IMG/VR virus record: IMGVR_UViG_3300032782_000001
Coordinates: 1 to 64,000 of that record
Reading direction: 5' to 3' (one strand)
Length of the DNA: 64,000 nucleotides
The notes below the pieces were generated by a model. The model searched no databases and was not told where the DNA came from. It was given only the letters and a program-made list of their open reading frames with translations. Position 1 is the stretch's first letter. Each line of letters opens with the position of its first letter. Of this stretch, positions 121 to 17,016 are shown piece by piece. The translations under genes and the position numbers were made by a program.

Positions 121-164
121 CGTCGCCTCCGTCCGCCAATACGACGGACGGAGGCGAATTTCCG
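121..164 (-). promoter_or_regulatory. promoter/RBS cassette with spacer complementary to its RBS
   Basis: CGGAAATTC-N12-CGTAT...GGAGGCGAC; TCGCCTCCGTCCG/CGGACGGAGGCGA inverted repeat. Confidence 0.7.
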
Positions 165-165
165 A

Positions 166-393
166 TCACCCGTCGTCTTGCGCGTCCGCGGTCGCCTCTT
201 CTTCCGTGTCGAAGGGACCGTTCGGCGTCCCGTCAGGCACGCACCCGGGGAAGCAGGCCCACCAGTACCAGCCTGCAGCGAGCTTCTCGCCGTCTTCGGC
301 CTCCAGCTCACCTTCCGGGGCGTAGAAGACCTCGGCGTTCGGCAGAGCCGTCTCTTCGGTCTCACGGCTCTTGTCGGTGTAAATCTGCGGCAT
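166..393 (-). CDS. acidic hypothetical protein
   Basis: ORF track; ATG after GGAGGTGAC cassette. Confidence 0.8.
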   Translation of the reverse strand: MPQIYTDKSRETEETALPNAEVFYAPEGELEAEDGEKLAAGWYWWACFPGCVPDGTPNGPFDTEEEATADAQDDG

Positions 394-395
394 TG

Positions 396-440
396 TCGTC
401 ACCTCCGATCTAGAGTACGACCGGAGGTGACGAACTTACG
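396..440 (-). promoter_or_regulatory. promoter/RBS cassette with anti-SD spacer
   Basis: CGTAAGTTC-GTCACCTCCGGT-CGTAC...GGAGGTGAC. Confidence 0.75.
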
Positions 441-443
441 GCC

Positions 444-704
444 TTACGGCACCTGCCAAGTCCCGTCGCCTTCGTAGTAGAAGACAGACGCGCCGCTCGG
501 CAGCTCGACGAACGGGCAGTAACCGCCGCGGTCTGACCCTTCTGGGTGTTCGTCCACGTAGCCCTTGCACCCTTCCGGCAAGGGTACGTCCTGGTCTTCG
601 ACCCAGCCCTCCCCGCGGGCCACTTCCTTCGTCAAAGTCACCACGCCCTTGTGGACAGACGGGGTGCAGCCTTCGAGGTACTTGAGAAGCTCAGTCCTGT
701 TCAC
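444..704 (-). CDS. hypothetical protein
   Basis: GTG start after cassette at 706-749. Confidence 0.8.
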   Translation of the reverse strand: MNRTELLKYLEGCTPSVHKGVVTLTKEVARGEGWVEDQDVPLPEGCKGYVDEHPEGSDRGGYCPFVELPSGASVFYYEGDGTWQVP

Positions 705-757
705 GTCGTCACCTCCGCACCTGAGTACGCGCGGAGGTGACGAACTTGCCCTTTGTT

Positions 758-1012
758 TTACTTGGACTGGACAACCGTCACTTGGAACTCCGATCCGTCC
801 GTGAGACGGAGGACGAATCCGGCGTTGTTCGTGAGGACCATGGCCTCCTCGAAGGAGCGAAGGTCTGCACCGACCAGCACAGCCCCATCGTCCAAGCCGG
901 ACTCCACCTCGGTCGAAAGACCGATGGTCTCCTGAAGCAGAGTCGCCATTTCCATCTCGTCCATCGTAGCGATGACCTCACCGATCCGGGCCGTGTGTAC
1001 GCTCTTCGCCAT
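758..1012 (-). CDS. hypothetical protein
   Basis: MAKSVHT... after cassette at 1014-1059. Confidence 0.8.
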   Translation of the reverse strand: MAKSVHTARIGEVIATMDEMEMATLLQETIGLSTEVESGLDDGAVLVGADLRSFEEAMVLTNNAGFVLRLTDGSEFQVTVVQSK

Positions 1013-1073
1013 CGTCGTCACCTCCGACTCTGGATACGACGATGGCCGGCGGATTTTCGCTCCGCCGGCCATC

Positions 1074-1427
1074 GAGACTGCACACCCGCGCTTGCCGGTT
1101 CTCCGGCTCTCAGCAAAGTTTGGAGGCGGCCACCAGCCGCCCGCTTTGACCCTTCCTCATCGGCCTCCTCACTTTCTGCGCCAGACCTCCGGTCTGGGAG
1201 AGCGTTGACCTCACCTATCCACGCCGTGCGAGTTGTCTCTTAACTGGGGGCCGGAGAACGGCAGCTTCGATCTCCCACCGCTAGCTGACGATCTTACCCC
1301 ACCCGGCGGCCGCAAGCCGCGCGATATAACGCAATCGGACTGCCTTTCCTTCGTAGGAGGTTGGTTTCTAGGACCTGTATGCCGCCGCGCGGTGGCCGGC
1401 CACCGCGCTCTCCCCGCTTGCGATCTC
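1074..1427 (-). ncRNA. candidate structured ncRNA (~354 nt)
   Basis: own promoter motif at 1430-1455 with no canonical RBS/ORF; 5'/3' closing stem, two interleaved long-range stems, several local hairpins. Confidence 0.6.
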
Positions 1428-1450
1428 CGGTACGCCGCGCGTCGCCGAAC

Positions 1451-1585
1451 TTACGACCGGAGCAACGAGCCGATCGCCTCGCGCGTCTCCAGACAGATCG
1501 CCAGCTGCGCCTCGGTGATCTTGCCCTCGTCGTACCACGCGAGGATCTTCTTCACGCTGCTGAACCGCACGCTCTTCTTCGCCAT
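1451..1585 (-). CDS. small hypothetical protein (44 aa, MAKKSVRFSSVKK...)
   Basis: manual translation; preceded by cassette at 1590-1632. Confidence 0.7.
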   Translation of the reverse strand: MAKKSVRFSSVKKILAWYDEGKITEAQLAICLETREAIGSLLRS

Positions 1586-1644
1586 CGGTCTCACCTCCAC
1601 AACCGAATACGACGCGGATCGCCAGACTTACGACCGCGCCCACA

Positions 1645-1684
1645 ATTCCCCTTTAAAATTGAACTGGGAATTTTAAAGGGGAAT
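1645..1684. repeat. 16-bp AT-rich inverted repeat between divergent promoters
   Basis: ATTCCCCTTTAAAATT-N8-AATTTTAAAGGGGAAT. Confidence 0.8.
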
Positions 1685-1749
1685 CCCTCGCCCAGCGGGC
1701 GCCGCAAATCCGACAGGGCCCGTCGTATCCAGGGACGGAGGTGATGACG

Positions 1750-2115
1750 ATGACGACGAACAACGCAGCGAGCTACCCGTTCCTCAGCAAGGCCCAGATC
1801 AAGGATCGCCTGGCCCAAGACCCGGACTTCGTCCGGGAGTGCGCCCTGATCATGCAGGATCGCCAGACGGCCTACGAGCAGGCCACCCTCACCACGAAGG
1901 ACCGCAACCGCAAGGGCTGGATGAGCAGCCACGCCGTCAACGGCGGCAAGCTCACCGCCAAGCTCCGCCAGGGAGAGGCCCTCGAAGCCGAGGAGTGGCT
2001 CAAGCTCCAGGAGATGGTCTCGCACTACGGCAAGCAGCTCGCGAGCCACTTCCGGGAGGCGGCCATCGAAGCCAACCCGACCCTCAAGGCCGCGGCCGCG
2101 ATCTTCGGCGTCTGA
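1750..2115 (+). CDS. hypothetical phage protein
   Basis: GC3-rich ORF after cassette at 1703-1745. Confidence 0.85.
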   Translation: MTTNNAASYPFLSKAQIKDRLAQDPDFVRECALIMQDRQTAYEQATLTTKDRNRKGWMSSHAVNGGKLTAKLRQGEALEAEEWLKLQEMVSHYGKQLASHFREAAIEANPTLKAAAAIFGV

Positions 2116-2123
2116 TCCAACCA

Positions 2124-2153
2124 GGCCCCGCCCGGGTTCTTCCGGGCGGGGCC
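2124..2153 (+). terminator. GC hairpin, possible terminator
   Basis: GGCCCCGCCCGG-loop-CCGGGCGGGGCC after stop; no U-tract. Confidence 0.5.
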
Positions 2154-2214
2154 TGCCCGTCAAAGCGGCCGCAAATCTGATGCGGCCGCGCGTATTGACA
2201 TTCGGAGGGTAACG

Positions 2215-2463
2215 ATGATCGACACGAGCTGCACGCTCACCGTGGGCGACTTGCTGGAAGCATTGAAGGCCGGTCGCGTGACCCCGGACACCTGCCTGGG
2301 ATACGCCGTTCGAGGGTTCCCGTCCGATGGCGTGGAGTCCATCTCTGCCATCAGCTTCCACAAATACGAGGACGGGACCCGGGTCCTCATCTTCTTGAAC
2401 GACGTTAACTCCCCACAAGTCGCTCGCGACGTCGTACCGCTGGAAGCCGAAGATTTGACCTGA
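2215..2463 (+). CDS. hypothetical protein
   Basis: after cassette at 2170-2210. Confidence 0.75.
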   Translation: MIDTSCTLTVGDLLEALKAGRVTPDTCLGYAVRGFPSDGVESISAISFHKYEDGTRVLIFLNDVNSPQVARDVVPLEAEDLT

Positions 2464-2468
2464 CCCCT

Positions 2469-2501
2469 AAGGCCGGGCTCGCGAAAGCGGGTTCCGGCCT
2501 T
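2469..2501. terminator. hairpin between convergent genes
   Basis: AAGGCCGGGCTCGC-GAAA-GCGGGTTCCGGCCTT. Confidence 0.6.
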
Positions 2502-2509
2502 CGTCGTTC

Positions 2510-2731
2510 TTACTCTGATGGGATGTTAAATCCCTTGGGGTGACCTTCAGGAATATCTGCCAAGATATCTTTTGAAAGATCCCCTTTAAAAGCCAATCCA
2601 ATACACCCCTTTGAACAATAGTCCTTACGGATCGCCTTCAAAGACGAGTCCCCCTCTACTTTAAGGACTAGCCAGTTAGAAGGGATGGACTGCCCGACAA
2701 CCGATTTTCCGCAAGTATTACAAACCCACAT
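2510..2731 (-). CDS. small Cys-rich protein
   Basis: CNTC...YCSKGC. Confidence 0.55.
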   Translation of the reverse strand: MWVCNTCGKSVVGQSIPSNWLVLKVEGDSSLKAIRKDYCSKGCIGLAFKGDLSKDILADIPEGHPKGFNIPSE

Positions 2732-2744
2732 GAAGAACAATACT

Positions 2745-2771
2745 TGGCAGGGGATCGTCGATCCCCTGCCA
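2745..2771. repeat. TGGCA-N17-TGCCA palindrome, copy 1
   Basis: TGGCAGGGGATCGTCGATCCCCTGCCA. Confidence 0.8.
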
Positions 2772-2816
2772 AGTATTTGTTTCAACCAGGGAATTTGCCC
2801 GTGTCGGGCCGAGCTT

Positions 2817-3272
2817 TCAAGATGGGACGACGAAATTTCCGCTTGAAAGAGCTGCCTGAAGGGACTTCATCATCACTTCCGGCGGGACGACACGCACGTC
2901 TCCCTCGACATCCGCGGCCATCCCAACCAGATCTTCCCAAGTGGCCGGAGGCGTCTCACCCTCCTCCAAATCCCACCCGACTTGGTCCCAAACCCCCTCC
3001 ATGTCGTCGTAAAGACCCATGGAGCCCCTGGTCCCACCCCCATGGATTTTCTCGTCAGCCGCTTCCACCGCGGCAGCCATCTCCGGAGTCCCTCCACCCG
3101 GAACTTTGAAAGCCTGCCATCCCCACGGCCCACTAACCGCCACATACGCGTCGCTCATAGCCGCCAGTACGCGGCGCAGCGCCGCACTTACGCGGACGCG
3201 ACTCGGTTTTTGACTGCGGTCAATTTTATCCGCAATTTGGCGCAAAGAAGCAGCAACCCGAGAAGGCGTCAT
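2817..3272 (-). CDS. protein with PSRVAASLRxIADKID leader (paralog of 14874-15284)
   Basis: near-identical 39-aa N-terminus. Confidence 0.85.
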   Translation of the reverse strand: MTPSRVAASLRQIADKIDRSQKPSRVRVSAALRRVLAAMSDAYVAVSGPWGWQAFKVPGGGTPEMAAAVEAADEKIHGGGTRGSMGLYDDMEGVWDQVGWDLEEGETPPATWEDLVGMAADVEGDVRVVPPEVMMKSLQAALSSGNFVVPS

Positions 3273-3363
3273 GCTTCTCTCCGTCAAAGGAGTTTTAGAA
3301 TCACGTCGCCACTTGCGTCAGCGGACCAAATTTTTGCCCCGCTTGCGTACGCGCGCGCAGGTA

Positions 3364-3390
3364 TGGCAGGTATTTCTGCGATCCCTGCCA
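3364..3390. repeat. TGGCA-N17-TGCCA palindrome, copy 2
   Basis: TGGCAGGTATTTCTGCGATCCCTGCCA. Confidence 0.7.
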
Positions 3391-3659
3391 GGGATCGAGC
3401 CGATCCTTCTAGTTAGGTTCGCCTTTTTGGCGTTTCTTTACTGAAGAGCCAAGTCATTCCGAGCACGGTGGTCACCAACCCCACCAAGAAGTAAGGCGGC
3501 GGGTATTCGTAGAGAAGCGCACCCAGCAAAGTAAAGCTGAGTCCGGAGATCACCAGGGCGACGGGAAAAAGGCGAGGCTTCACGAGTAAAAACCGGACCC
3601 TGGAGCCGCATGGTCGCCGGTTGGAGGTGACGACGGTCGGCTCCAGGGTCCCAAGGTGT

Positions 3660-3845
3660 TCAGTCGATGCGCCGCGCCTCCAAGCCCTTCTTCGTCGGAC
3701 GAAGGGTTCCGTCCACCTCGACGATGAAACCCTTCTTGACGAGGGCGAATCGCCGTCGACCGTCGATGGCGTGGGCCGGACACGGCTCCTTCACGTCGTC
3801 GCAATAGACAATTGAGAGCAGGGCCATCCAGGTTTCGAAAGTCAC
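3660..3845 (-). CDS. hypothetical protein
   Basis: SD GGAGG; GTGA overlap with upstream gene. Confidence 0.65.
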   Translation of the reverse strand: MTFETWMALLSIVYCDDVKEPCPAHAIDGRRRFALVKKGFIVEVDGTLRPTKKGLEARRID

Positions 3846-4201
3846 GGCGATTCCTCCTTCTTAGAACGCTCTGCGTCAAGGACCTTCTTGGCCCGGACGA
3901 ACAACTCCCGCCAGTAGACGTGGCTGAAGTAAACGGAGATAGACGAGTTCTTCCCCGGATTGAGGCCCCGGAGGCACTCGAGCAAGTCAGCATCCGAAAG
4001 CCCGTTCGCCGTGGCGAACGCTGCCTCGTACTGCGCTTGAGGAACGAGATTGAAGAGCTGCTCCACGAGCGGAACCTTCTCAGGTAGGTCCGGCGGACCG
4101 TCGCTCGGAGCCGGCGCGTTGTCCTTCACCAGCTTGGCAATGGCCTGAAGCTGGGCCTTTGCCTCCTCGAGCTTGTGCTCAACTTTCTCGTCGGATCCCA
4201 T
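3842..4201 (-). CDS. hypothetical protein
   Basis: SD GGAGG; ORF track. Confidence 0.8.
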   Translation of the reverse strand: MGSDEKVEHKLEEAKAQLQAIAKLVKDNAPAPSDGPPDLPEKVPLVEQLFNLVPQAQYEAAFATANGLSDADLLECLRGLNPGKNSSISVYFSHVYWRELFVRAKKVLDAERSKKEESP

Positions 4202-4245
4202 TTAATCAAAACCTCCGACCGATCTTACGTTGAAAAGCAGAAGGT

Positions 4246-4473
4246 TTACGACGTTTCGTAGACCTTCAAACTCTCCCACGCCGGGATAGCAAACTGCTCG
4301 TCGTAGTCCCGCTCCGTGTCGTTCATGTCCTGCCGCCAGTCGATCTCGTGCTGATAGCAGGACTTGCAAACGATGGCATTGGAATCGCCACCCGTCGGCA
4401 GAAGCCGGACTTCACCTTCGACGCAGATCCCGAGCTGCTTGTCACAGCGAGGATTGTTGTAATGAGTCGCCAA
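4246..4473 (-). CDS. hypothetical protein
   Basis: TTG start after cassette at 4476-4520. Confidence 0.7.
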   Translation of the reverse strand: MATHYNNPRCDKQLGICVEGEVRLLPTGGDSNAIVCKSCYQHEIDWRQDMNDTERDYDEQFAIPAWESLKVYETS

Positions 4474-4528
4474 GTTCGTCACCTCCGGATCCAAATACGA
4501 CCGGAGGTGACGAACTTGCGCCGTCGCG

Positions 4529-4999
4529 TCAGTCCAGACGATCGTCCTGACCACAACGAGGGTCGCACTGGCCCGGAGGCGCCCCGCACTCCTCGCAATC
4601 GTCCGAGTGGTCTTCCGGGTCGGAATTGTCATCGCAGATGGGAGTCCCACCCAAGGCTTCGAGAACCGCCGTCACCGTCTTGCAAACGGACGTCTCGGCC
4701 GTCCGAGGAGAACAGAGGGTCTCGCAAATTTTCCAAGACCGGACGTATTGCCAACCGTCGACGTAAGGAAGGGACAATCCCTCCCAACGGTCGTGACGCC
4801 AAGGGATCTCCCCGTGGTTCTCCTTGTCGATGTGCTTCGCCAACAGGTCGCAGACGACCCGGGCAAGCTCCTCCGAAGCACACAGGACCAAATGGTCCGT
4901 GTCCGGAGCCTCCCCGTCGTAATCGCCGTAGATCGCCCAGCAAGGCACGGCCAGAATCGGCTTGGCCAACTCGTAGATCTTCTCGAGGTCCTCAGTCAC
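4529..4999 (-). CDS. hypothetical protein with Cys-rich C-terminus
   Basis: after cassette at 5001-5045. Confidence 0.8.
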   Translation of the reverse strand: MTEDLEKIYELAKPILAVPCWAIYGDYDGEAPDTDHLVLCASEELARVVCDLLAKHIDKENHGEIPWRHDRWEGLSLPYVDGWQYVRSWKICETLCSPRTAETSVCKTVTAVLEALGGTPICDDNSDPEDHSDDCEECGAPPGQCDPRCGQDDRLD

Positions 5000-5062
5000 G
5001 TCGTCACCTCCGCGATCGGATACGACGCGGCCCGGCGGATTTCTGCGATCGCGCCGAGTTCT

Positions 5063-5359
5063 TCAAAAACTCCCGGCGGTTGAGCTGCGGTCGAACGACA
5101 GGATCATGTCGTTCCCGAAGAGTTTCTCGGCCACCTTCCGGTTCTCCGTCGGAGTTCCTTCTTCCAAGGGATGGACTTTGGAAGCCGGCACCCGGACGTT
5201 CTCGTACATGGAGTGCCACTTCACGACGTACGTGACCCTTCCAATCCCCGGCTTCCGATTCGGGTCGAGCTCGTTGGAGACCACCTCGCCTTCCACGAGC
5301 CGTCCCTTGAGGACGAAACCGACCTTCGAACCCTTCGGAAGAACCTTGTAACCACTCAT
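5063..5359 (-). CDS. hypothetical protein
   Basis: after cassette at 5367-5409. Confidence 0.8.
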   Translation of the reverse strand: MSGYKVLPKGSKVGFVLKGRLVEGEVVSNELDPNRKPGIGRVTYVVKWHSMYENVRVPASKVHPLEEGTPTENRKVAEKLFGNDMILSFDRSSTAGSF

Positions 5360-5437
5360 CCGGCCATCACCTCCTGCCCCCGATACGCCGCGGAACCGCC
5401 AGATTTGCGCCCCGGCTTCAAAGGGGACCTTTAAAGA

Positions 5438-5638
5438 CTAACTCTTCATGACTTCAAGGATGATTTTCTCTTCGCAAGGGACCCACTCCGGAACGGGTCC
5501 AGTACCTTGGACTGGCACGTGGAGATTCCAAGGAGGCTTCCTGGAAGACCAGTGGACTCCTCCGCATTTGGAACACCTCCATTTTAGAGCTCCTTCGGGT
5601 TCTTCCTGGACCCAGACGTGCCCCGAATGTCTTCCCAT
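5438..5638 (-). CDS. VMES-tag protein, HxW/CxxC type
   Basis: ends EEKIILEVMKS. Confidence 0.8.
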   Translation of the reverse strand: MGRHSGHVWVQEEPEGALKWRCSKCGGVHWSSRKPPWNLHVPVQGTGPVPEWVPCEEKIILEVMKS

Positions 5639-5814
5639 AAGCTAAAACGTAAATTCGAACCGGTCAGACGTATCCGGAATCAACAAACATAAATGTACCG
5701 GAAGACGGGATCATTTCAACGAACGTCCGGTATTTCGGGGGGTTTGGAAGTTCCGGGTGATTGGGAGTTGGAGGTCCGGAAGTTCGGGGATTTGGAAGTT
5801 TCGGGAGGTTGGGG

Positions 5815-6105
5815 ATGTTCCGTCGGCTCGTCGGGGTATGGGGCTGGTTCAGGCGTCGATTTCGGTCTTTGCCTCCAGCTCCTCCCAGTCTTCTGGCATG
5901 TGATCACCAGGTTTTGAAAATCCCGTTGTTTTCTCGGGATGGTCGGTGGCAGTCTTGCGGGTGTCCGGCGGCTCATTGGTTCTTGAGGGAGTATGATGGG
6001 TGTTTGGTACCTGTCTGTTCCCGGCATTTCAGTCTTTGGATCCTGCATGGCTGGCATTCCGTCTCTTGGGACGAAGCCCTTGTAGCCCAAGTCATGTTCT
6101 CTTGA
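5815..6105 (+). CDS. VMES-tag protein, Zn-module type
   Basis: ends DEALVAQVMFS; SD GGGAGG. Confidence 0.7.
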   Translation: MFRRLVGVWGWFRRRFRSLPPAPPSLLACDHQVLKIPLFSRDGRWQSCGCPAAHWFLREYDGCLVPVCSRHFSLWILHGWHSVSWDEALVAQVMFS

Positions 6106-6432
6106 GTCTGGCCCTGGAACGGGTCCTTCTTGCGTTCCGTTGCCCCTTCCTTCGTCTCGAACCAGTCTGACGGTCCTCTTGGGCCCTAGAACCTCCCCGA
6201 CGCCACGGAAAAACCGCTCCCTTTCGCGGGCGCCCGCGCAGGTGTGCCATATATTGGCCGAACTCCTGTCATACATTTTCCTACATAATGAACAGGGATT
6301 CTGTTTTATGGTCTGTCGGGTCTATGTTAAGGCGTGTGGCCCTAGGGGTGTTGTTTTGAAATTTCCTTGTTGGACCGCCAAACTGGATTCCAACTTGTTA
6401 AAGGTGATCTTCCCCCTAGTCACCTTTCATTC

Positions 6433-10442: not shown

Positions 10443-10724
10443 TCAAACCCACTCGAAGCCGAGACAGGAAAGGACGCTGGAAAGCCAGTCTCCGATGAGC
10501 TCCGGGTCCTGATCGGTGTCTCCCTCGAGGAGCTCGCCGTACTCCTTGTTGGCCTTTTGGATCTCCTCCCAGAGCTCGAACTTGTTGAGGGCGTCCGTGC
10601 CGATGCGCTTGTCGTTTCCGAAGTGGAACTTCCCGCCTCGGAGTTCTCCTTCCGCTTCCAGCTCATCCCAAGCCGCGTCGTACTGCTCGAACGTGGGGAG
10701 CTCGCCGTAGGTCATCGAGATCAT
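10443..10724 (-). CDS. acidic hypothetical protein
   Basis: after cassette at 10728-10770. Confidence 0.8.
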   Translation of the reverse strand: MISMTYGELPTFEQYDAAWDELEAEGELRGGKFHFGNDKRIGTDALNKFELWEEIQKANKEYGELLEGDTDQDPELIGDWLSSVLSCLGFEWV

Positions 10725-10792
10725 CGCGTCACCTCCGCGATCGGATACGCCGTGACTCGTTGGATTTACGATCGCGTTGTACGGTTCCCTAA

Positions 10793-11032
10793 GTGATCGT
10801 CCTTGACGATATTCCGACTTGCACTGCGGACCTCGGCGGTCTTTGGGATGATGAACCTCTTTGCAAGAATCCGGTCCGGTGGGTATTAGTGACACCCAAC
10901 GCTTGCCGACACTCCATGGATGATTTTCCAGAGGGAGTTTGTGATGAGCATAAGATGCATCTGCGCCCAAGAGATGATCAAGTCATCCTGAGCGTAGAAG
11001 AATTCATCTGCTACGACGTCTCTACCTCTTGA
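10793..11032 (+). CDS. Zn-module protein with divergent tag
   Basis: CKNPV...CDEH; ends EEFICYDVSTS. Confidence 0.7.
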   Translation: MIVLDDIPTCTADLGGLWDDEPLCKNPVRWVLVTPNACRHSMDDFPEGVCDEHKMHLRPRDDQVILSVEEFICYDVSTS

Positions 11033-11035
11033 AAT

Positions 11036-11251
11036 TTATTCGCCGTGACGCGTGCTTTTCAGCTCCTGCATCTCGACATTGAGCGCCTTGAGTTCCTTGT
11101 AGAACCCGAGCTTCTTGGCGAGTGCTGCGATCTTCTTGAGATCCGATCGCTTCACGACCACGTGAGCTCGCATCCACTTCCGAGCGTCTTCTTCTCGGAA
11201 GATATCCTCGGTGTTGTTGATGTAGATCATTCGCCCTCCATCAACGTACAC
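11036..11251 (-). CDS. hypothetical protein
   Basis: ORF track; start may be 11230. Confidence 0.6.
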   Translation of the reverse strand: MYVDGGRMIYINNTEDIFREEDARKWMRAHVVVKRSDLKKIAALAKKLGFYKELKALNVEMQELKSTRHGE

Positions 11252-11270
11252 TTCTTTCCGGCTGAACCCT

Positions 11271-11297
11271 TGTAGGCGTGAAGGGAGTCGAACCCTT
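11271..11297 (-). pseudogene. orphan tRNA 3' fragment (T-arm plus acceptor strand)
   Basis: AAGGG-TTCGACT-CCCTT-CACGCCT-ACA; no matching 5' half. Confidence 0.55.
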
Positions 11298-11514
11298 AAG
11301 ACATCATTACTTCATGGACGATGAACTCTGCTCGAGTGAGTTCCTGGACGAATCCCTTCTTGATTTCTTCCAAGAAAGTCGGATCCTCCGCGACGCATCG
11401 TTTGCAGCGGATAATGGGTCGCTTGCTGATGGTTCCTACAAAGAACCGGACGTCCTTGCTCATGCACATCGTGGTTTCCCACCCGAAGGGTACTTGGTTC
11501 TGGCAATAATCCAT
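11296..11514 (-). CDS. VMES-tag protein
   Basis: ends EFIVHEVMMS. Confidence 0.8.
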   Translation of the reverse strand: MDYCQNQVPFGWETTMCMSKDVRFFVGTISKRPIIRCKRCVAEDPTFLEEIKKGFVQELTRAEFIVHEVMMS

Positions 11515-11592
11515 ACTAGTCCCGGAAACCAGCCAATACGACGACCGGCGAATTTGCGCTATTGCCAAGTATGGCTGAGGACAGTTTACAGG

Positions 11593-11667
11593 TGGACCGG
11601 AAGGGATTCGAACCCTCAGTTAGGAAGTTTTTAAAACCTCTGTGTCTGCCTTTTCCACCACCGGTCC
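11593..11667 (-). tRNA. tRNA-Leu(UAA) with short variable loop
   Basis: acceptor GGACCGG/CCGGTCC, Leu-type D arm, anticodon loop TTTAAAA, T loop TTCGAAT, discriminator A. Confidence 0.85.
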
Positions 11668-11867
11668 GGATTGGTTCCTTCTTCGGTTCAGTTTTCTTTG
11701 AGCCAATTACGATGACTGGCTGCTCGGAGTTTTTCCAGTTTTCGCAGTTCTTTTAATTCTCGTAGCCATTTTGCTAGTTGCTTATGATCTCTTCCGCAAG
11801 GAGTGTCCTCGGAGGATTTTTCTTCCGCATGTTTAATAGCTTCTTCGAGTCTCATCCAGTGTATCCT

Positions 11868-12098
11868 TTACGCTTCCGGCAGCTTCACATGGATCCAGCC
11901 GAGAGACTTCGAGTTGTTGAGGCTCGGCTTCCTCTCACCTTCTCGAGCTGGCTGAGTATCCCCGGCCTTACGTTCCAGAACATCGAAGTTCGTGGCAGCC
12001 GTGTTCTTCTGACGAATCTCGTTGAAGGCCATCTGAGCGGCCTCTTCCGGCGAATTGGCCTCGAAGTCCATGTCCCAGCGCACGCGGTAATTCTTCAT
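11868..12098 (-). CDS. hypothetical protein
   Basis: MKNYRVRW...; ATGA overlap. Confidence 0.7.
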   Translation of the reverse strand: MKNYRVRWDMDFEANSPEEAAQMAFNEIRQKNTAATNFDVLERKAGDTQPAREGERKPSLNNSKSLGWIHVKLPEA

Positions 12099-12469
12099 CG
12101 CTTCTCCTTCGGAGCCTTCTTTGCTGGACGAACACTCGCCTTGTTGAACCTTCCTGAGACGAGGCTGATGACGCCAAGGAGCGTGGCCTCCCCACAAAGG
12201 ATGGAGCCTTCCGCAGCGTCGTAGAGGTAAATGCCCTCGAAAGGGTGACTCACCAACCCGAGGTAATCCTCTTCGTATTCCTGGACGACCTTCCGGTCCT
12301 TCCAGAACTGTTGGGCGCGTTTGGTGGCGAGTTGGATGTCGGAGTATGCTCCGAGGATGACATCCGTTGTCTCGTCATCTTGGACGATGACGTCCGGATC
12401 TCCTTCACCGTCTTGGTCCGTCACCACGTCGTAGTTGTTCCAAACGGTTCCCAGGATCACAACTGCCAT
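12095..12469 (-). CDS. hypothetical protein
   Basis: after cassette at 12472-12516. Confidence 0.8.
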   Translation of the reverse strand: MAVVILGTVWNNYDVVTDQDGEGDPDVIVQDDETTDVILGAYSDIQLATKRAQQFWKDRKVVQEYEEDYLGLVSHPFEGIYLYDAAEGSILCGEATLLGVISLVSGRFNKASVRPAKKAPKEKR

Positions 12470-12520
12470 CGTCGTCACCTCCAGATCAGGATACGACGTG
12501 ATCCGCCGAATTTGCGCTGG

Positions 12521-12709
12521 TCAGGCCGACATCACTTCGTACACGAGCCACGAGTTTCTCTCTTCGGGGGACATGGACTGAATAACTTCATCCAAGTTTG
12601 CCTGAAGCCTTTGCCGAAAGACTTCACGTTTCTCTTCGGACCTGGTGTCGTTCGTCAGCACATCTTGCAGTTGAGCGCTGATCCAGAACGCATCTTGAAC
12701 TTTGCTCAT
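12521..12709 (-). CDS. VMES-tag protein
   Basis: ends WLVYEVMSA. Confidence 0.8.
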   Translation of the reverse strand: MSKVQDAFWISAQLQDVLTNDTRSEEKREVFRQRLQANLDEVIQSMSPEERNSWLVYEVMSA

Positions 12710-13029
12710 GATGCATGGACCGCCAAGATGGTCATCTGACGCTTCACACGTTCTTTGATTTCCTCGAGGGGTCCGAAGAAGATGCGAAACCCGACGCCAT
12801 CCTTCGTGTACCAGATCTCACGACCATTGGCCTCTTGGGCGATGTTCATCCCGATCTGGATGTACTCGTGGGGCTCCAAATCCTGCCCCACATAATCGAA
12901 ATCCGTGAGTCCACCCTCGGTGAAATCCCCATTATCCAACGGGAAGATCTCGGCGTCGTTCTCTCGAGCGACAATGAACTCGGCGACAAGCGCCTGGAGT
13001 TCCTCATCCTCCTTGAATTTCAGCTCCAT
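12706..13029 (-). CDS. VMES-tag protein (variant)
   Basis: ends TILAVHAS. Confidence 0.75.
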   Translation of the reverse strand: MELKFKEDEELQALVAEFIVARENDAEIFPLDNGDFTEGGLTDFDYVGQDLEPHEYIQIGMNIAQEANGREIWYTKDGVGFRIFFGPLEEIKERVKRQMTILAVHAS

Positions 13030-13229
13030 GAGCCATCCTCCAGCTTCTTCAGCTCCACGAGCGCCTTGGCATATGCCTCTTCGATCATCGACCGACGAGC
13101 CAATGCGAGGTGAGCTTTTTCGTGGTCGACGACTGCCTTCCGCTCGGACGCCGTGAGCTTCCGGATCATGCCGGGGTCCCAACAGACAGAACAGGTTCCA
13201 GCCTTGTAAACCATCTTAGGTTCGGCCAT
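13020..13229 (-). CDS. hypothetical protein
   Basis: after cassette at 13233-13276. Confidence 0.75.
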   Translation of the reverse strand: MAEPKMVYKAGTCSVCWDPGMIRKLTASERKAVVDHEKAHLALARRSMIEEAYAKALVELKKLEDGSWS

Positions 13230-13277
13230 TATCGTCACCTCCAGATCTGAGTACGTCGGCGACCGGCGAATTTACGA

Positions 13278-13841
13278 TCACGCCTCCATCACGTCGAACA
13301 CATAACATAACTGAAGGGCTTTTTCCTTGGAAATTTCCTCGAATTTCTTGACCTCTTTGGCAAGTATGCAGACTTCACAAAGTCCAAATGGAGGTTCTCC
13401 CTGGAAGAACTTCTTAGCCGGCTTCCGCTCGGCGGTTTTCCCGAGGTCTCTACCTTTGGAATCGTATTTTGAATGCATGTTCCTGCAAAACATCAGCATC
13501 CCGGAAGGAGGAAGTGGAGTTGATGATAAGAAGGCTTCTTGTTCGGGTAGTCCTGTGAGGTCGGATTTATTTATCGCTCCCGCTCCAAGCGCTCTTACCT
13601 GGTCGAGGACGTGCATGACCGATTGGTACTTGGTGAGACGCAGATCCTGAATGATTTCTGTACTGAGACCACTTTTGAGTAGCCTTTGAACCGAGCCCAC
13701 AGGCACGTGTTCCATCATGGAGCACACTTGCACATAACGCTCCGTGGCGTACCGCTTGTAGCCCTTTTCGTAAAGCCCTTTCGCCTCCAGCATGGCTTGA
13801 CGAATTTTGTCCATCAAAGCATTCAACGATATGTCGTCCAT
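13278..13841 (-). CDS. VMES-tag protein
   Basis: ends CYVFDVMEA. Confidence 0.8.
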   Translation of the reverse strand: MDDISLNALMDKIRQAMLEAKGLYEKGYKRYATERYVQVCSMMEHVPVGSVQRLLKSGLSTEIIQDLRLTKYQSVMHVLDQVRALGAGAINKSDLTGLPEQEAFLSSTPLPPSGMLMFCRNMHSKYDSKGRDLGKTAERKPAKKFFQGEPPFGLCEVCILAKEVKKFEEISKEKALQLCYVFDVMEA

Positions 13842-13849
13842 GATTCGAC

Positions 13850-14170
13850 CTAGCTATACATGACCGTCCAGACAGTCCACTCTTCGTCCGAAAGCTTGCG
13901 GATTTTCCCATGGAAGATGGTGTCTTCTCCCATAAAGCCCTTGTTCATGCACGACTTGCAGACGAGGAACATGGTGGCCCGGATCTTATCCAGCTTATCC
14001 AGACTCCCTACATTGGAATGCTGTTGAAGGTATTCTTCGGCGAAGACGAAAGCTGCAATGGGCTTCCCTGACTGAGTCCCCATGTGATTGGAACATGATG
14101 GGTCGCAGCAACGACCAGCTGTACCCCTCTTGGCCCTGGCCAGAAGCACCATCAGCTCTCGGTCGTTCAT
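13850..14170 (-). CDS. VMES-tag protein
   Basis: ends SDEEWTVWTVMYS. Confidence 0.8.
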   Translation of the reverse strand: MNDRELMVLLARAKRGTAGRCCDPSCSNHMGTQSGKPIAAFVFAEEYLQQHSNVGSLDKLDKIRATMFLVCKSCMNKGFMGEDTIFHGKIRKLSDEEWTVWTVMYS

Positions 14171-14172
14171 AT

Positions 14173-14325
14173 CTACTCCCAGTTCTCGACTTTCCAAGCG
14201 GACTGGCGCTCCTTGGCGCGTCGATCCGCTCGATGACGCATCTTCGCAGCCTTGCAGTTAAGAATGGCCGTAAGGCATTCGATGGAACGGGGCTTTTTAG
14301 GCTGCCGAGCCTTGCGAATCTTCAT
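14173..14325 (-). CDS. small basic protein (50 aa, MKIRKARQPKK...)
   Basis: manual translation; cassette at 14328-14372. Confidence 0.7.
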   Translation of the reverse strand: MKIRKARQPKKPRSIECLTAILNCKAAKMRHRADRRAKERQSAWKVENWE

Positions 14326-14372
14326 CGTCGTCACCTCCAGGCGAAAATACGCCGGGGGCTGACGGACTTCCG

Positions 14373-14787
14373 CTATGCGACTTGCACCTGCTGGACAATC
14401 CTCTTAGCGAGGTATACGTTGCATTCCGCGATGAAGGCATCGTTGATGGCGTAATATCGATTGTCGAGATCATCGGTATCCTCACCAGACACCGCGTCCG
14501 GGTCGAATTTCATCGCCAGTTGGACGAGCCGCAGAACTTTCGCGGACAGGTCCGTGTTCATCTGATTCAGGGCGAACTTCAGGAACGGAAACCCGACGTC
14601 GTAGCGGTTGCCGAGCCACTGGGAGAAGCCCCCCGTTTTGAACCTGATGGTTCAATTGCCCGAGAACGGCGGCGTCCCTTTGCAGAGGCTCGAGACTCAT
14701 GAGGAAGGTCTCCGTCGACCAATCACTGTGGTCTCGCCACAGGTCGTATGCCTCGTTCATGAGCCTCTGGTGCACGGAATCCGGCAT
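14373..14787 (-). pseudogene. DMP19/DUF4375-like gene frameshifted in a G6 run
   Basis: removing one G at 14629-14634 restores LNHQVQNGGFSQW and joins two ORFs. Confidence 0.7.
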
Positions 14788-14873
14788 ATGTCGCCTCCGG
14801 CACCGAATACGACGCGGCCCGGCGGACTTACGACCGGCCGGGCCCTAGACTTTCAAGCGTAATTGCTTTAACG

Positions 14874-15284
14874 TCAGCTTACGCCGAGGAAATCGGCGAC
14901 GGCATCCATTACGATCTGCTGGATCCCTTCGGGATCTTGCGTAATATCGAAACCCGGTTTCCCCTCAATGCTCCCGTTCTTCCAATCCCAACCGCCGACG
15001 TTGCCCGCATCGTCCAGCATCAAAATCATGACGCCAGCAACAGGGTTCCCATCGACCAGTCCTTGAAACTTGGCTGCAGGTTCATTTGGTTTCTTTGTAA
15101 CTTCCGTCATCTCTAGACGGTATCCGCCAGGCTGCATCGGATCGCCGGATTCCGCCTCGCCTTCGTTCATACTCGCGAGTACGACGCGGATCGCCGAACT
15201 TACGCGGACGCGACTCGGATTGGAAGATCGGTCAATTTTATCGGCGATCTCTCGCAAGGAGGCGGCAACCCGAGAAGGTATCAT
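14874..15284 (-). CDS. protein with PSRVAASLRxIADKID leader
   Basis: N-terminus paralogous to 2817-3272. Confidence 0.85.
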   Translation of the reverse strand: MIPSRVAASLREIADKIDRSSNPSRVRVSSAIRVVLASMNEGEAESGDPMQPGGYRLEMTEVTKKPNEPAAKFQGLVDGNPVAGVMILMLDDAGNVGGWDWKNGSIEGKPGFDITQDPEGIQQIVMDAVADFLGVS

Positions 15285-15311
15285 GCCTCAATCCCTCAAA
15301 AGAGGGCTAGT

Positions 15312-15509
15312 TCAGTGAGGCCAGAGCGGAACCGAGAAGTATGCTTCAGGCGGAATACCAGGAACCGTTGCGGGGATGGGATCCACAATCGTGTTCGTGG
15401 GCTTCGGCACGTATTTGACGGGGTTATTGGTGGGTACGTATGAAGCCGGGTCAACCTTCGTCGACTGGGCCGTGAGCTGTCCGAGATCGGTGTATGCGAC
15501 GGTTGCCAT
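15312..15509 (-). CDS. Pro/Thr-rich small protein
   Basis: ORF track. Confidence 0.6.
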   Translation of the reverse strand: MATVAYTDLGQLTAQSTKVDPASYVPTNNPVKYVPKPTNTIVDPIPATVPGIPPEAYFSVPLWPH

Positions 15510-15524
15510 ACAACCTTATCGCAA

Positions 15525-15749
15525 TTAAAGACCTTGCGATGCAACGAAAGACTCTTGGACGTCTTCCTTCCGAAGGACCATTCCACCCCCGTTCCAGCCG
15601 AGACTGTATGGGTGGTCTTCATGCCACTTCGTCCATCTTCCTTCACCTCCGTGAGGTGGGTGCTCTGTGATGGATAGTTTGAGAGTTAGTGGCAGTTCCA
15701 ACTCGGGAGAAAGCTTGGAAAGCACTTCCATGAGTTCACATACTTTCAT
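15525..15749 (-). CDS. hypothetical protein
   Basis: MKVCELMEVLSKL...; SD GGAG. Confidence 0.65.
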   Translation of the reverse strand: MKVCELMEVLSKLSPELELPLTLKLSITEHPPHGGEGRWTKWHEDHPYSLGWNGGGMVLRKEDVQESFVASQGL

Positions 15750-15767
15750 GGGTTCTCCACAGAATAA

Positions 15768-15844
15768 GAAGGCGCCTCGAGAAAGGGACCGTTCCTGAAC
15801 CATTTCTCAGATCCAGCTCCGGGTCCCTTTCTCGAGGCGCCTTC
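15768..15844. repeat. 23-bp perfect inverted repeat with 31-nt loop
   Basis: GAAGGCGCCTCGAGAAAGGGACC and its reverse complement. Confidence 0.85.
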
Positions 15845-15849
15845 CTCCG

Positions 15850-16017
15850 TCAGTCCTTGTAACCGGTCGATACCTTCGGAATCGTTTCATCTCCGATGCG
15901 GAGCAGCTTCTTCGAGATGCGGCGGAACTCCTTGTGAGCCCGGCGCTTGTGCTCCCCCTTGGTTGCAGAGGATGCACGCTTGCACTGACGACAATTGCAC
16001 GAGTAGTAGACCTTCAT
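15850..16017 (-). CDS. small basic Cys-containing protein (55 aa)
   Basis: MKVYYSCNCRQCKR...; SD AAGGAGG. Confidence 0.75.
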   Translation of the reverse strand: MKVYYSCNCRQCKRASSATKGEHKRRAHKEFRRISKKLLRIGDETIPKVSTGYKD

Positions 16018-16148
16018 CGAGAACCTCCTTCAATTCATCGCCAGCCTCCTTTCCGTGAGCTAGTTTAGCACTGTGTTTCACAGGTCAGCTCACTTCCACC
16101 TGTTTAGATCATTGTACTAGGCGTGGGCACTGATCTATTACCTGGGAA

Positions 16149-16358
16149 TCATCGTTTGGTCGTTCCAGTCGAGGACTCTAGATGAGCCCTAATAGCCGCA
16201 GCCCAATCCCGGAGTGCTGACGTATGAACGACTGAGAGATGCCCGGTGGCCGTATAAATGAGGTGGTTCTGTCCTTGTGGTAGAACCCAGCCGCCGCCAT
16301 CTCCGGTTTTGGCAGCTTCTTCGATACACTCGAGAACCTCATCTAACGGTCGGGTCAT
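16149..16358 (-). CDS. hypothetical protein
   Basis: ORF track. Confidence 0.6.
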   Translation of the reverse strand: MTRPLDEVLECIEEAAKTGDGGGWVLPQGQNHLIYTATGHLSVVHTSALRDWAAAIRAHLESSTGTTKR

Positions 16359-16359
16359 T

Positions 16360-16611
16360 TCAATCGTCCCAACCTTCCGGCATCTTCTCTGAGACGTCCA
16401 GTCCTGCTTTCTCGAGGCTATCCTCGATGGACTGGTAGATTTCGTTGGCCGTCAACAAGGCCTTCCCCTCTCGAATCGAGAGAACGACATCTTCGAGGAG
16501 CGCGCGGACCTCCGCTTCGGAGAGATCCGCGATCGTCTTCTGGGCGACCGACTGCTTCTGAGCGGCTTTCTTCTGAGCGGCTTTCTTCTGAGCGGCTTTC
16601 TTGGTTGCCAT
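16360..16611 (-). CDS. protein with (KKAAQ)3 basic N-terminal repeat
   Basis: 15-bp tandem repeat at about 16556-16602. Confidence 0.75.
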   Translation of the reverse strand: MATKKAAQKKAAQKKAAQKQSVAQKTIADLSEAEVRALLEDVVLSIREGKALLTANEIYQSIEDSLEKAGLDVSEKMPEGWDD

Positions 16612-16621
16612 TGTTCTCTCC

Positions 16622-16957
16622 TCAGTCGAACACACCGCGCTGGCAAGCCTCCTCGAGGCTGTAATCTTCCTCGTCTTCCTCGTCTTCCTCGTCCTCGTCG
16701 CTCTCGTAGGCGACTTGCGGAAAGTACACGATGACGTCGCGACCCATCGAATCGCTGTGGGCTCCTTGCAATTCCTCCGCGATCGTCTGCATGTCGCACG
16801 AGACGTCGGCGGCAGCCTGGAAAAGTGCCCCGTAGATCTCGGTGATGCTGGACCCCTCGATGCCGAGGCAATCCTTACCGAACATGAACCGGCCGGAATA
16901 CGACCGGACGTGGAGCTCCGCGGCCTCGGCCAAATCTTGCAATGCGCTCTTCGTCAT
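16622..16957 (-). CDS. hypothetical protein with acidic tail
   Basis: after anti-SD cassette at 16958-17003. Confidence 0.8.
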   Translation of the reverse strand: MTKSALQDLAEAAELHVRSYSGRFMFGKDCLGIEGSSITEIYGALFQAAADVSCDMQTIAEELQGAHSDSMGRDVIVYFPQVAYESDEDEEDEEDEEDYSLEEACQRGVFD

Positions 16958-17016
16958 TTCGTCACCTCCACGGTTCGATACGCGCGGAGGTGACGAATTT
17001 GCGCCGGCCGATCGAC

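What the first reader, a model, noticed from the sequence alone, without database searches (positions are those of the whole stretch)
121..17003. Promoter spacers that are the reverse complement of the gene's own RBS
Seen at 121-160, 396-434, 706-744, 4471-4518 (18-bp perfect arms CAAGTTCGTCACCTCCGG/CCGGAGGTGACGAACTTG, covering the TTG start) and 16958-16997: the spacer reads GTCACCTCCG and the -10 element falls in the loop. At 121 the spacer co-varies with a variant RBS (GGAGGCGA). Inference: mRNA initiated at the local promoter lacks the anti-SD and is translated, whereas read-through mRNA from upstream folds and occludes the RBS. This would be a built-in translational insulator or timing switch; a DNA cruciform is an alternative.
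Basis: partly seen in the sequence, partly recalled or inferred. Interest (0 to 1): 0.7.

Follow-up and report, generated by a model that had tools for sequence, protein, structure and literature searches.

The report
Promoter cassettes that hide their RBS
A 436-kb uncultivated phage puts the same ~50-base promoter-plus-ribosome-site cassette in front of about 50 early-type genes. In a fifth of them the promoter spacer is the complement of the ribosome site, so only RNA started at the gene's own promoter should be translatable; this is a new variant of a trick already known from phage T4.

Summary
Five more lie across the contig junction of the same 436,316-bp phage genome.

They are a subset of a rigid repeated cassette: CGnAARTY, 13 nt, CGTAY, 8 nt, GGAGGTGA, 5-8 nt, start codon. 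There are about 54 copies, all in one ~55-kb region, on both strands, including back-to-back divergent pairs. The same cassette occurs in two other huge phages and about 20 metagenome contigs.

Strong spacer:SD hairpins (at or below -24 kcal/mol) occur at 10 of 47 cassettes here (0.2 expected) and 5 of 25 in one relative. The variable flanks co-vary, and the helix is rebuilt with different pairs in a 78%-identical ortholog.

Predicted accessibility of GGAGG is 0.02 in read-through RNA and 0.40 in locally started RNA.

The cassette as a whole resembles T4-type PeSL promoter/stem-loop cassettes. 'Insulator' fits better than 'timing switch', because the upstream promoters carry the same motif. 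No RNA data exist, so start sites and read-through remain inferred.

Verdict: a new variant of a known kind, of moderate interest.

The parts
123..157 (-). Class A hairpin 1. The spacer TCGCCTCCGTCCG pairs with CGGACGGAGGCGA (a variant SD), with CGTAT at the stem top. The cassette spans about 115-164. The ATG is at 117-115 and the 77-aa gene runs across the contig junction.
   Evidence: -32.0 kcal/mol; z -4.6.
396..433 (-). Class A hairpin 2: TCGTCACCTCCGG / TCGGAGGTGACGA with CGTAC in the loop. It precedes gene 166-393 (75 aa, ATG at 393). The upstream gene's stop codon is at 446-444.
   Evidence: I21; -29.5; z -6.8.
706..743 (-). Class A hairpin 3: TCGTCACCTCCGC / GCGGAGGTGACGA. It precedes gene 444-704 (86 aa, GTG at 704).
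   Evidence: -31.6; z -5.6. The 78%-identical ortholog in L172 keeps a hairpin made of different pairs.
4471..4518 (-). Class A hairpin 4: 18-nt perfect arms covering the SD and the TTG start (4473-4471) of gene 4246-4473 (75 aa). The 5' arm reaches into the -35-like GCAAGT.
   Evidence: I7; -32.5; z -6.4. The GC1/2/3 pattern supports the minus-strand gene.
16958..16997 (-). Class A hairpin 5: TTCGTCACCTCCGCG / CGTGGAGGTGACGAA (one G.U pair). It precedes gene 16622-16957 (111 aa; phrog_14658, unknown function).
   Evidence: I22; -28.8; z -6.7.
1011..1074 (-). Class B cassette. A GC-rich stem (arms 1040-1053 and 1061-1074) has the -35-like GCGAAAAT in its loop, and its 3' arm is the promoter spacer. 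CGTAT, the SD and ATG 1012 follow. There is no anti-SD.
   Evidence: I23; upstream:spacer duplex -32.1 kcal/mol.
17472..17527 (-). Class B cassette directly upstream of hairpin 5's neighbour gene. The stem spans 17498-17527 with GGCGCAAGTT in the loop. It precedes gene 17017-17472.
1585..1750 (.). Back-to-back divergent cassettes (CGTA at 1611 on the minus strand and 1724 on the plus strand) at the head of two opposed genes. Each strand's transcription must begin here.
   Evidence: Other divergent pairs are at 21187/21734 and, outside the window, 433763/433821.
1..49100 (.). The in-window part of the ~55-kb cassette region, which continues at 430.4-436.2 kb of the contig. The left arm is on the minus strand (21.2 kb down to 1). 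The right arm is on the plus strand (21.7-49 kb). There is about one cassette per kb.
   Evidence: GC is about 0.56, against 0.50 genome-wide.

Best explanation
The window is the start of a 436-kb huge-phage genome. One ~55-kb region carries about 54 copies of a rigid cassette: -35-like CGnAARTY, a 13-nt spacer, -10-like CGTAY, 8 nt, GGAGGTGA, 5-8 nt, then the start codon. I read this as a phage-specific, non-sigma-70 promoter fused to an RBS. It may be served by the phage's conserved ECF-like sigma.

At about a fifth of the cassettes (class A), the otherwise free spacer has evolved into the complement of the gene's own SD and its flanks. Class A sites all lie in arrays of 44-111-aa ORFan genes on the left arm.

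RNA started at the gene's own promoter begins downstream of CGTAY. It therefore lacks the 5' arm and has a free SD. Any RNA that enters from an upstream cassette carries both arms and folds into an 11-18-bp, -24 to -39 kcal/mol hairpin. That hairpin buries the SD and, at 4471-4518, the start codon as well. These genes would then be translated only from their own promoter.

The likely benefit is insulation. In a row of co-directional promoters without canonical terminators, expression would otherwise build up on downstream genes.

Other cassettes (class B) use the same spacer as the 3' arm of a terminator-like stem with the -35 in the loop. This looks like an alternative way to handle incoming transcription, and orthologous genes switch between the classes.

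Shown: the motif, its distribution, the non-random and co-varying helices, and the predicted accessibilities.

Inferred: promoter function, the position of the start site, the existence of read-through, and the selective benefit.
For: Cassette as promoter:
- 54 sites fall only in 430.4-436.2 kb plus 1-49 kb, on both strands, each just before a start codon. Information content is high at -21..-12 and 0..5, with fixed spacing.
- Divergent back-to-back pairs occur where transcription must begin.
- There is no excess of sigma-70-type promoters or canonical terminators in 1-20000.
- The genome is a virus record with an RpoD-like sigma and an ECF-like sigma. The ECF-like one is 58-61% conserved in both relatives that share the cassette.

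Hairpins are selected:
- 10/47 observed against 0.21 expected here, and 5/25 against 0.24 in G001.
- Spacers pair better with their own downstream segment than with swapped ones: p = 0.0002 in G000 and 0.001 in G001.
- Anchored on CCTCC/GGAGG, inner pair i1 is paired in 16/16, i2 in 16/16 with 4 pair types, and i3 in 14/16 with 5 types.
- The anti-SD sits at different offsets in the spacer (-7 to -11), so complementarity, not a fixed word, is conserved.
- The ortholog of gene 444-704 in L172 (78% identical) keeps a -29.1 kcal/mol hairpin built from shifted pairs.
- The ten downstream proteins are not paralogs of one another.

Switch behaviour:
- P(unpaired) of GGAGG is 0.02 in a -80..+70 context and 0.40 when RNA starts at +6 to +12. 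Classes B and C show no such difference.

Translational coupling does not explain it:
- Upstream stop codons lie at -19 to -37 at nine sites. A terminating ribosome would melt the stem substantially only at two sites, 431710 and 436093.

Precedent:
- T4 e, soc, 49, I-TevI, segB and Aeh1 mobE.
- PeSL cassettes.
Against: - No transcript data exist: no RNA run was listed. Neither the start site nor read-through is shown.
- The -35/-10 spacing (14 nt between AAAT and CGTA) is shorter than in textbook ECF promoters, and the sigma assignment rests on co-occurrence in only three genomes.
- Only about 20% of cassettes have the hairpin. G002 has none at the -24 kcal/mol threshold.
- Orthologs of gene 16622-16957 have class B or no hairpin, so the feature is labile and dispensable.
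- Because the cassette is rigid, the SD may simply be the only available partner for building any strong stem-loop. The selected function could then be termination or 3'-end protection rather than SD occlusion.
- Upstream and local promoters are the same class, unlike the T4 cases, so there is no evident temporal logic.
Confidence: 0.6

Rival explanations
1. The stem-loops are primarily terminators, attenuators or 3'-end stabilisers for the upstream gene, as shown for T4-type PeSL stem-loops. In a rigid cassette the SD region is just the only long partner available to the spacer, so SD occlusion is a side effect.
For: - Both hairpin classes sit directly after the upstream stop codon.
- Class B stems (-35 in the loop) are equally non-random (own versus swapped p < 0.0002) and do not touch the SD.
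- Orthologs switch between class A and class B.
- A PeSL stem-loop reduced downstream reporter expression as much as a strong terminator (PMC2839356).
Against: - No U-tract follows the class A 3' arm; a start codon and coding sequence follow.
- Canonical terminators are not enriched.
- Stems extend over SD flanks, and at one site over the start codon, beyond what a terminator needs.
- Whatever was selected, the SD would still be buried in any RNA that is not terminated. This rival is largely compatible with the main account.
Confidence: 0.2
2. The hairpins enforce translational coupling. On polycistronic RNA the SD is opened only when a ribosome finishing the upstream gene melts the 5' arm.
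For: - Upstream stops are close, at -19 to -37 from CGTA.
- At 436093 the upstream gene ends in the TGA of GGAGGTGA itself. At 431710 the stop is the TAA of the -35-like GTAAAT.
Against: With a reach of about 12-13 nt past the A site (established ribosome-footprint knowledge), a terminating ribosome would open the stem substantially at only 2 of 10 sites. It would open none of it at stops -29 to -37. Coupling does not need a promoter in the loop.
Confidence: 0.07
3. The inverted repeats act at the DNA level. They could be a cruciform that modulates the promoter, an N4-like hairpin promoter, or an operator for a dimeric regulator.
For: Perfect palindromes exist (18-nt arms at 4471-4518), and the -10-like element lies in the loop. 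N4 virion-RNAP promoters are DNA hairpins (from my own knowledge; not checked in a paper here).
Against: - Only 10 of 47 cassettes have it, so promoter recognition cannot require it.
- Arm sequences and their offset in the spacer vary, with compensatory changes. This fits a helix, not a fixed protein site.
- Several stems need G.U pairs and are much weaker on the opposite strand: 431710 folds at -28.9 versus -17.1, and G001 326143 at -31.5 versus -19.7.
Confidence: 0.06
4. The hairpins are a non-functional by-product: inverted partial duplications made by recombination between the many near-identical cassettes on opposite strands.
For: Cassettes occur on both strands and look recombinogenic. 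In L172 the gene downstream of a conserved cassette has been replaced. PeSLs recombine with each other.
Against: - Compensatory variation occurs in the non-conserved inner pairs, and a hairpin is rebuilt in an ortholog.
- The feature recurs in three distinct phage lineages (G000, G001, L124).
- All ten sites lie in one arm among co-directional small genes (about 0.009 by my own hypergeometric estimate, not a tool result).
Confidence: 0.05

Closest known systems
T4-type translational control by an RBS hairpin with a promoter inside it (T4 e, soc, 49, I-TevI/II/III, segB; Aeh1 mobE)
   Same: The SD and/or start codon is buried in a stable helix on transcripts that start upstream. A promoter lies in or next to the DNA encoding the 5' strand, so its own transcripts lack that strand and are translated (PMC3014915 section 29; PMC2988022 section 12).
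   Different: - In T4 the upstream promoters are early or middle and the internal one is late, giving a timing device for single genes. Here upstream and local promoters share one motif.
- The anti-SD is the promoter spacer itself, inside a rigid cassette.
- The device recurs at about 20% of some 50 promoters, in a huge phage with a non-sigma-70 promoter.
- Nothing has been tested experimentally.
PeSLs (promoter-early stem-loops) of T4-like phages
   Same: Both are short composite intergenic cassettes running from the upstream stop codon through -35, -10 and a stem-loop to the SD and start codon. Both are repeated before small ORFan genes in plastic regions. The stem-loop lies between -35 and -10 or over the -10. 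It is proposed to stop transcription accumulating from distal cassettes. The cassettes act as recombination sites for gene shuffling (PMC2839356, PMC4122927).
   Different: - PeSL promoters are sigma-70-like with AT-rich upstream regions. This cassette is CGnAARTY/CGTAY.
- PeSL stems are polyG/polyC and are not described as pairing with the SD. Here class A stems use the SD as the 3' arm.
- Spacing to the SD is fixed to the nucleotide here.
- Shuffling is seen here only once (G000 versus L172).
ECF-type sigma promoters (-35 'AAC', -10 'CGT')
   Same: A two-block motif with an A-rich -35 and a CGT-containing -10. The phage encodes a divergent ECF-like sigma that is conserved in the relatives.
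   Different: The -35 reads AAAT/AAGT, not AAC. The gap to CGTA is 14 nt, against 16-17 in the Bacillus subtilis ECF promoters I recall (from memory). No binding or transcription test exists.
Phage N4 virion-RNAP hairpin promoters
   Same: An inverted repeat at a phage promoter with promoter bases in the loop (from my own knowledge).
   Different: N4 needs the DNA hairpin at every early promoter, with short 5-7-bp stems and 3-nt loops. Here most cassettes lack any hairpin, and stems are 11-18 bp with 4-9-nt loops and G.U pairs.

Membership tests
T4-type promoter-in-hairpin translational control | The SD and/or start codon is sequestered in a stable RNA helix on upstream-initiated transcripts. 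| tested here: met
   Predicted only. Folds are -24 to -39 kcal/mol. P(unpaired GGAGG) is 0.02 in read-through context.
T4-type promoter-in-hairpin translational control | A promoter is placed so that its transcripts lack the 5' strand of the helix. | tested here: inconclusive
   The conserved -35-like and -10-like blocks bracket the 5' arm at every site, but no 5' ends are mapped.
T4-type promoter-in-hairpin translational control | Upstream and internal promoters belong to different temporal classes (early/middle versus late). | tested here: not met
   All cassettes upstream in the same arm carry the same motif. There is no sigma-70-type excess.
T4-type promoter-in-hairpin translational control | Read-through transcripts from upstream really exist. 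| not testable with these tools
   No RNA run was listed. The only indirect support is the lack of canonical terminators.
PeSL composite promoter/stem-loop cassettes | A repeated intergenic cassette: upstream stop, promoter, stem-loop, SD, start codon. | tested here: met
   About 20 of 47 cassettes have a strong stem (10 class A, about 10 class B).
PeSL composite promoter/stem-loop cassettes | The promoter is a sigma-70-like early promoter with an AT-rich upstream region. | tested here: not met
   The motif is CGnAARTY...CGTAY, with no conservation or AT-richness upstream of -21. The sigma-70 scan is at or below shuffle level.
PeSL composite promoter/stem-loop cassettes | The cassettes are concentrated before small ORFans in a plastic region. 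| tested here: met
   Class A genes are 44-111 aa with no Pfam hit and one PHROG of unknown function. Few have orthologs in G001 or G002.
PeSL composite promoter/stem-loop cassettes | The stem-loop terminates or attenuates upstream transcription. | not testable with these tools
   There is no U-tract after class A stems and no RNA data.
PeSL composite promoter/stem-loop cassettes | The cassettes mediate modular gene shuffling. | tested here: inconclusive
   One case: L172 keeps the ortholog of gene 444-704 and the next class A cassette, but a different 60-aa gene follows.
N4-like DNA-hairpin promoters | The hairpin is required at, and present in, every promoter of the class. | tested here: not met
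   10/47, 5/25 and 0/20 cassettes have a strong hairpin.
ECF sigma-dependent promoters | -35 'AAC' and -10 'CGT' at 16-17 nt, recognised by an ECF sigma. | tested here: inconclusive
   CGTA is invariant by search design. AAAT/AAGT lies 14 nt upstream. An ECF-like sigma is present and conserved. There is no functional test.
Known Rfam cis-regulatory RNAs (thermometers, leaders) | A match to a curated covariance model. | tested here: not met
   The only hit in the whole window at gathering threshold is a tRNA.

The most novel reading that the evidence does not exclude
A whole clade of uncultivated huge phages may run its early-type genes from one standardised promoter-RBS part, with nucleotide-fixed spacing and transcripts that begin a few bases before the SD. 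The free 13-nt spacer would be the tunable element. Left plain, it lets read-through RNA be translated. Turned into an anti-SD, it makes translation strictly dependent on the gene's own promoter. Paired upstream, it becomes a terminator-like stem. Evolution would toggle between these states at orthologous genes. That would make it a natural, genome-wide modular insulator system rather than the one-off timing device known from T4.
Probability: 0.35. Interest if true: 0.6.

Novelty: new variant of a known kind. Interest (0 to 1): 0.45.

Why it matters
If confirmed, this would show that the T4 'promoter inside an RBS hairpin' device is not a curiosity of a few late genes. It would be a reusable design that an unrelated 436-kb phage applies to a fifth of one promoter class, alongside terminator-like stems built from the same spacer.

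It also defines a strong, previously undescribed promoter-RBS consensus for a clade of wetland and soil huge phages. That consensus is useful for annotating their early-type regions and start codons, for pairing a phage sigma with its promoter, and as a compact natural insulator part for synthetic biology.

It does not open a new kind of mechanism.

Tried and rejected
- **RNA evidence.** Two run searches found only two DNA wetland metagenomes and no RNA run.
- **Strain variation.** Contigs of a ~98%-identical strain laid on 1-6000 showed no substitution in hairpin arms at 1-744 and one in a loop (position 136). About 1.4 were expected, so this is uninformative.
- **Loose structural criterion.** Requiring at least 4 SD bases paired and at least 8 spanning pairs did not discriminate: 20 observed against 21 expected. 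C-rich spacers pair with the G-rich SD anyway. I replaced it with an energy threshold.
- **Sense versus antisense folding energy.** The difference is biased by selection and by a background offset (-3.6 versus -2.4 kcal/mol). Only individual G.U-rich stems are informative.
- **Mirrored SD + TTG on the plus strand.** It opens 165-239-aa ORFs at three sites, but their GC1/2/3 pattern is non-coding while the minus-strand genes show the coding pattern. I rejected these as shadow ORFs.
- **Function of the ten hairpin-gene proteins.** Pfam found nothing and PHROGs gave one family of unknown function.
- **Phage RNA polymerase.** Pfam models for RNAP beta, beta' and T7-type RNAP found nothing. Divergent phage RNAPs could be missed.
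- **Rfam.** No family matches at the hairpins.
- **Orthologs in G001 and G002.** None of the class A genes has one at E < 1e-4.
- **Orthologs of gene 4246-4473.** More distant ones sit in operons without a cassette.
- **Literature.** Searches for this motif, or for anti-SD promoter spacers, found nothing specific.

Full report
**1. What is there**

The genes in 1-21 kb are on the minus strand. Read on that strand, each site has this order:
- the upstream stop codon;
- a -35-like GCAAGT, GCAAAT or GGAAAT;
- a spacer containing TCGTCACCTCCG (TCGCCTCCGTCCG at 121-160);
- CGTAY;
- 8 nt;
- GGAGGTGA (GGAGGCGA at 121-160);
- 5-8 nt;
- ATG, GTG or TTG.

The 18-nt perfect arms at 4471-4488 and 4501-4518 cover the TTG start. 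The anti-SD word with up to 1 mismatch occurs 40 times in the window, against 5.9 expected.

**2. Context**

The window is the first 64 kb of a 436,316-bp IMG/VR virus record. It has a 127-bp terminal overlap, so it is effectively circular, and it comes from a wetland metagenome. It encodes an RpoD-like sigma and a divergent ECF-like sigma. No RNA polymerase is detectable by Pfam.

Searching CGTAY-N3-12-GGAGG over the whole genome gave 63 hits. Of these, 54 lie only in 430.4-436.2 kb plus 1-49 kb, on both strands, each just before a start codon.

Aligned on CGTA, the sites share a rigid motif:
- CGnAARTYCG at -21 to -12;
- CGTAY at 0 to 4;
- GGAGGTGA at +13 to +20.

There is no conservation upstream of -21. 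47 sites have exactly this spacing.

Several observations point to a promoter fused to an RBS rather than an RNA-only signal:
- Back-to-back divergent pairs occur at 1611/1724, 21187/21734 and 433763/433821.
- Sigma-70-type promoters and canonical terminators are not enriched.
- The motif has a two-block architecture.

The ECF-like sigma has its own TTGTTA-17-TATAAT promoter. It is 58-61% conserved in both relatives that share the cassette. This makes it a candidate for recognising the cassette, but that is inference.

**3. The hairpins are a selected subset**

I folded -17 to +27 at every cassette. The results, using a threshold of -24 kcal/mol:

| Genome | Strong hairpins | Expected from shuffled spacers |
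|---|---|---|
| G000 (this genome) | 10 of 47 | 0.21 |
| G001 (393-kb phage) | 5 of 25 | 0.24 |
| G002 (427-kb phage) | 0 of 20 | about 0 |

In this genome the sites have CGTA at 143, 419, 729, 4499, 16982, 430750, 431036, 431710, 432416 and 436093. All ten are on the left arm, before 44-111-aa genes that are not paralogs of each other. These genes have no known function.

Further evidence for selection on the helix:
- Spacers pair better with their own downstream segment than with those of other cassettes (p = 0.0002 in G000, 0.001 in G001).
- Anchored on CCTCC/GGAGG, the inner pairs draw their 3' partner from the non-conserved 8-nt segment. They are paired in 16/16, 16/16 and 14/16 hairpins, with 3, 4 and 5 pair types.
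- The anti-SD sits at offsets -7 to -11 in different sites. What is conserved is complementarity, not a fixed word.
- The metagenome scan found about 20 further contigs with two or more cassettes and one more independent strong hairpin, L124.

Orthologs:
- The 78%-identical ortholog of gene 444-704 in L172 keeps a -29.1 kcal/mol hairpin, but it is built from inward-shifted pairs.
- The next L172 cassette keeps the outer arms with different inner pairs, and a different gene follows it.
- Orthologs of gene 16622-16957 (58-59% identical) carry the cassette with a class B stem (L168) or no strong stem (L167).

**4. A second stem class**

At about 10 other cassettes the same spacer is the 3' arm of a GC-rich stem whose loop holds the -35-like element. 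Window examples are 1040-1074, 14816-14844 and 17498-17527. This class is equally specific to its own partner (p < 0.0002). It occurs where the upstream stop lies 40 nt or more from CGTA. Class A occurs where the stop is at -19 to -37.

**5. Mechanism**

A bacterial-type polymerase starts downstream of its -10 element. RNA from the local cassette therefore lacks the spacer, while RNA from an upstream cassette has both arms.

Predicted P(unpaired) of GGAGG:

| Class | Read-through RNA (-80..+70) | Local RNA (start +6 to +12) |
|---|---|---|
| A | 0.02 | 0.40 |
| B | 0.38 | 0.36 |
| C (no strong stem) | 0.36 | 0.45 |

Helices of -24 to -39 kcal/mol are far beyond what 30S subunits can invade (established knowledge on RBS structure and translation).

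The rivals fare as follows:
- **Translational coupling.** A ribosome stopping at the upstream stop would melt the stem substantially at only two sites, so coupling is not a general explanation.
- **DNA-level roles.** These are disfavoured because most cassettes lack the repeat, and several stems depend on G.U pairs and are 10-12 kcal/mol weaker on the other strand.
- **Mirrored SD + TTG.** The plus-strand ORFs it opens are shadows.

**6. Comparison with what is known**

As a repeated composite of stop codon, promoter, stem-loop and SD before small ORFans, the cassette closely parallels T4-type PeSLs. PeSL stems lie between -35 and -10 or over the -10. They are proposed to block the build-up of transcription from distal cassettes, and they mediate gene shuffling (PMC2839356, PMC4122927).

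The differences here are:
- a non-sigma-70 promoter with fixed spacing;
- the SD itself serving as the 3' arm;
- upstream and local promoters of one class, so this is insulation rather than timing;
- systematic use, at about 20% of cassettes;
- a huge-phage clade.

**7. Limits**

No RNA data exist. The following remain inferred:
- promoter function;
- start-site position;
- read-through;
- the selective benefit.

The hairpin is labile among relatives and absent from G002.

**Verdict**

This is a new variant of a known kind.

Noticed in passing
window 1040-1074, 14816-14844, 17498-17527 (also 2191, 33991, 43117; outside the window G000 430461, 432218, 432652): A second stem class. GC-rich hairpins have the -35-like element in the loop and the promoter spacer as the 3' arm. 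They look like terminators but have no U-tract.
   Followed up: partly
window 2739-2777, 31396-31430, 44081-44117: Three near-perfect 17-19-nt palindromes share the arm TGGCAGGGG...CCCCTGCCA (0 expected by chance). They sit at gene ends or a convergence point, flanked by A/T. They may be bidirectional terminators or a protein site.
   Followed up: partly
window 8796-8920: A ~125-nt block of interleaved perfect inverted repeats (43-nt arms 8796-8838/8852-8894, overlapping 33-nt arms 8836-8868/8888-8920). It lies between a gene end and the cassette at 8673. Its function is unknown: it could be a structured RNA, a strong terminator or a replication-related element.
   Followed up: no
window 15768-15790 / 15822-15844: A 23-nt perfect inverted repeat with a 31-nt gap in the left arm. 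Not examined.
   Followed up: no
window 11591-11667 (-): tRNA-Leu (anticodon UAA) embedded among the cassette-driven genes of the left arm.
   Followed up: no
G000 436073-436093 and 432025 (L045); G000 431727-431729: Signals do double duty. The TGA inside GGAGGTGA is the stop codon of the upstream gene at two cassettes. At 431710 the TAA of the -35-like GTAAAT is the upstream stop.
   Followed up: partly
window 1750-2115 (+); G000 433847-434374 (+): This is the only small cassette gene conserved in all three huge phages (47-57% identity), and it is present in two paralogous copies here. The 433.8-kb copy has two cassettes: one lies inside the ORF and gives a nested 118-aa form of the 175-aa product.
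   Followed up: partly
L172 (JBAIGN010051466.1) 430-700 versus window 166-440: A relative keeps the ortholog of gene 444-704 and the following class A cassette, but a different 60-aa Cys-rich gene follows. This looks like PeSL-style gene replacement at a conserved cassette.
   Followed up: partly
L002 (G000 174.5-177.8 kb) 1849-1960 (-): The phage's ECF-like sigma gene has a near-consensus sigma-70-type promoter (TTGTTA, 17 nt, TATAAT with TG upstream). This suggests a cascade from a housekeeping-type sigma to this sigma.
   Followed up: partly
window 960-1009: A ~98%-identical strain in a second wetland sample has a 48-nt in-frame deletion within gene 758-1012.
   Followed up: no
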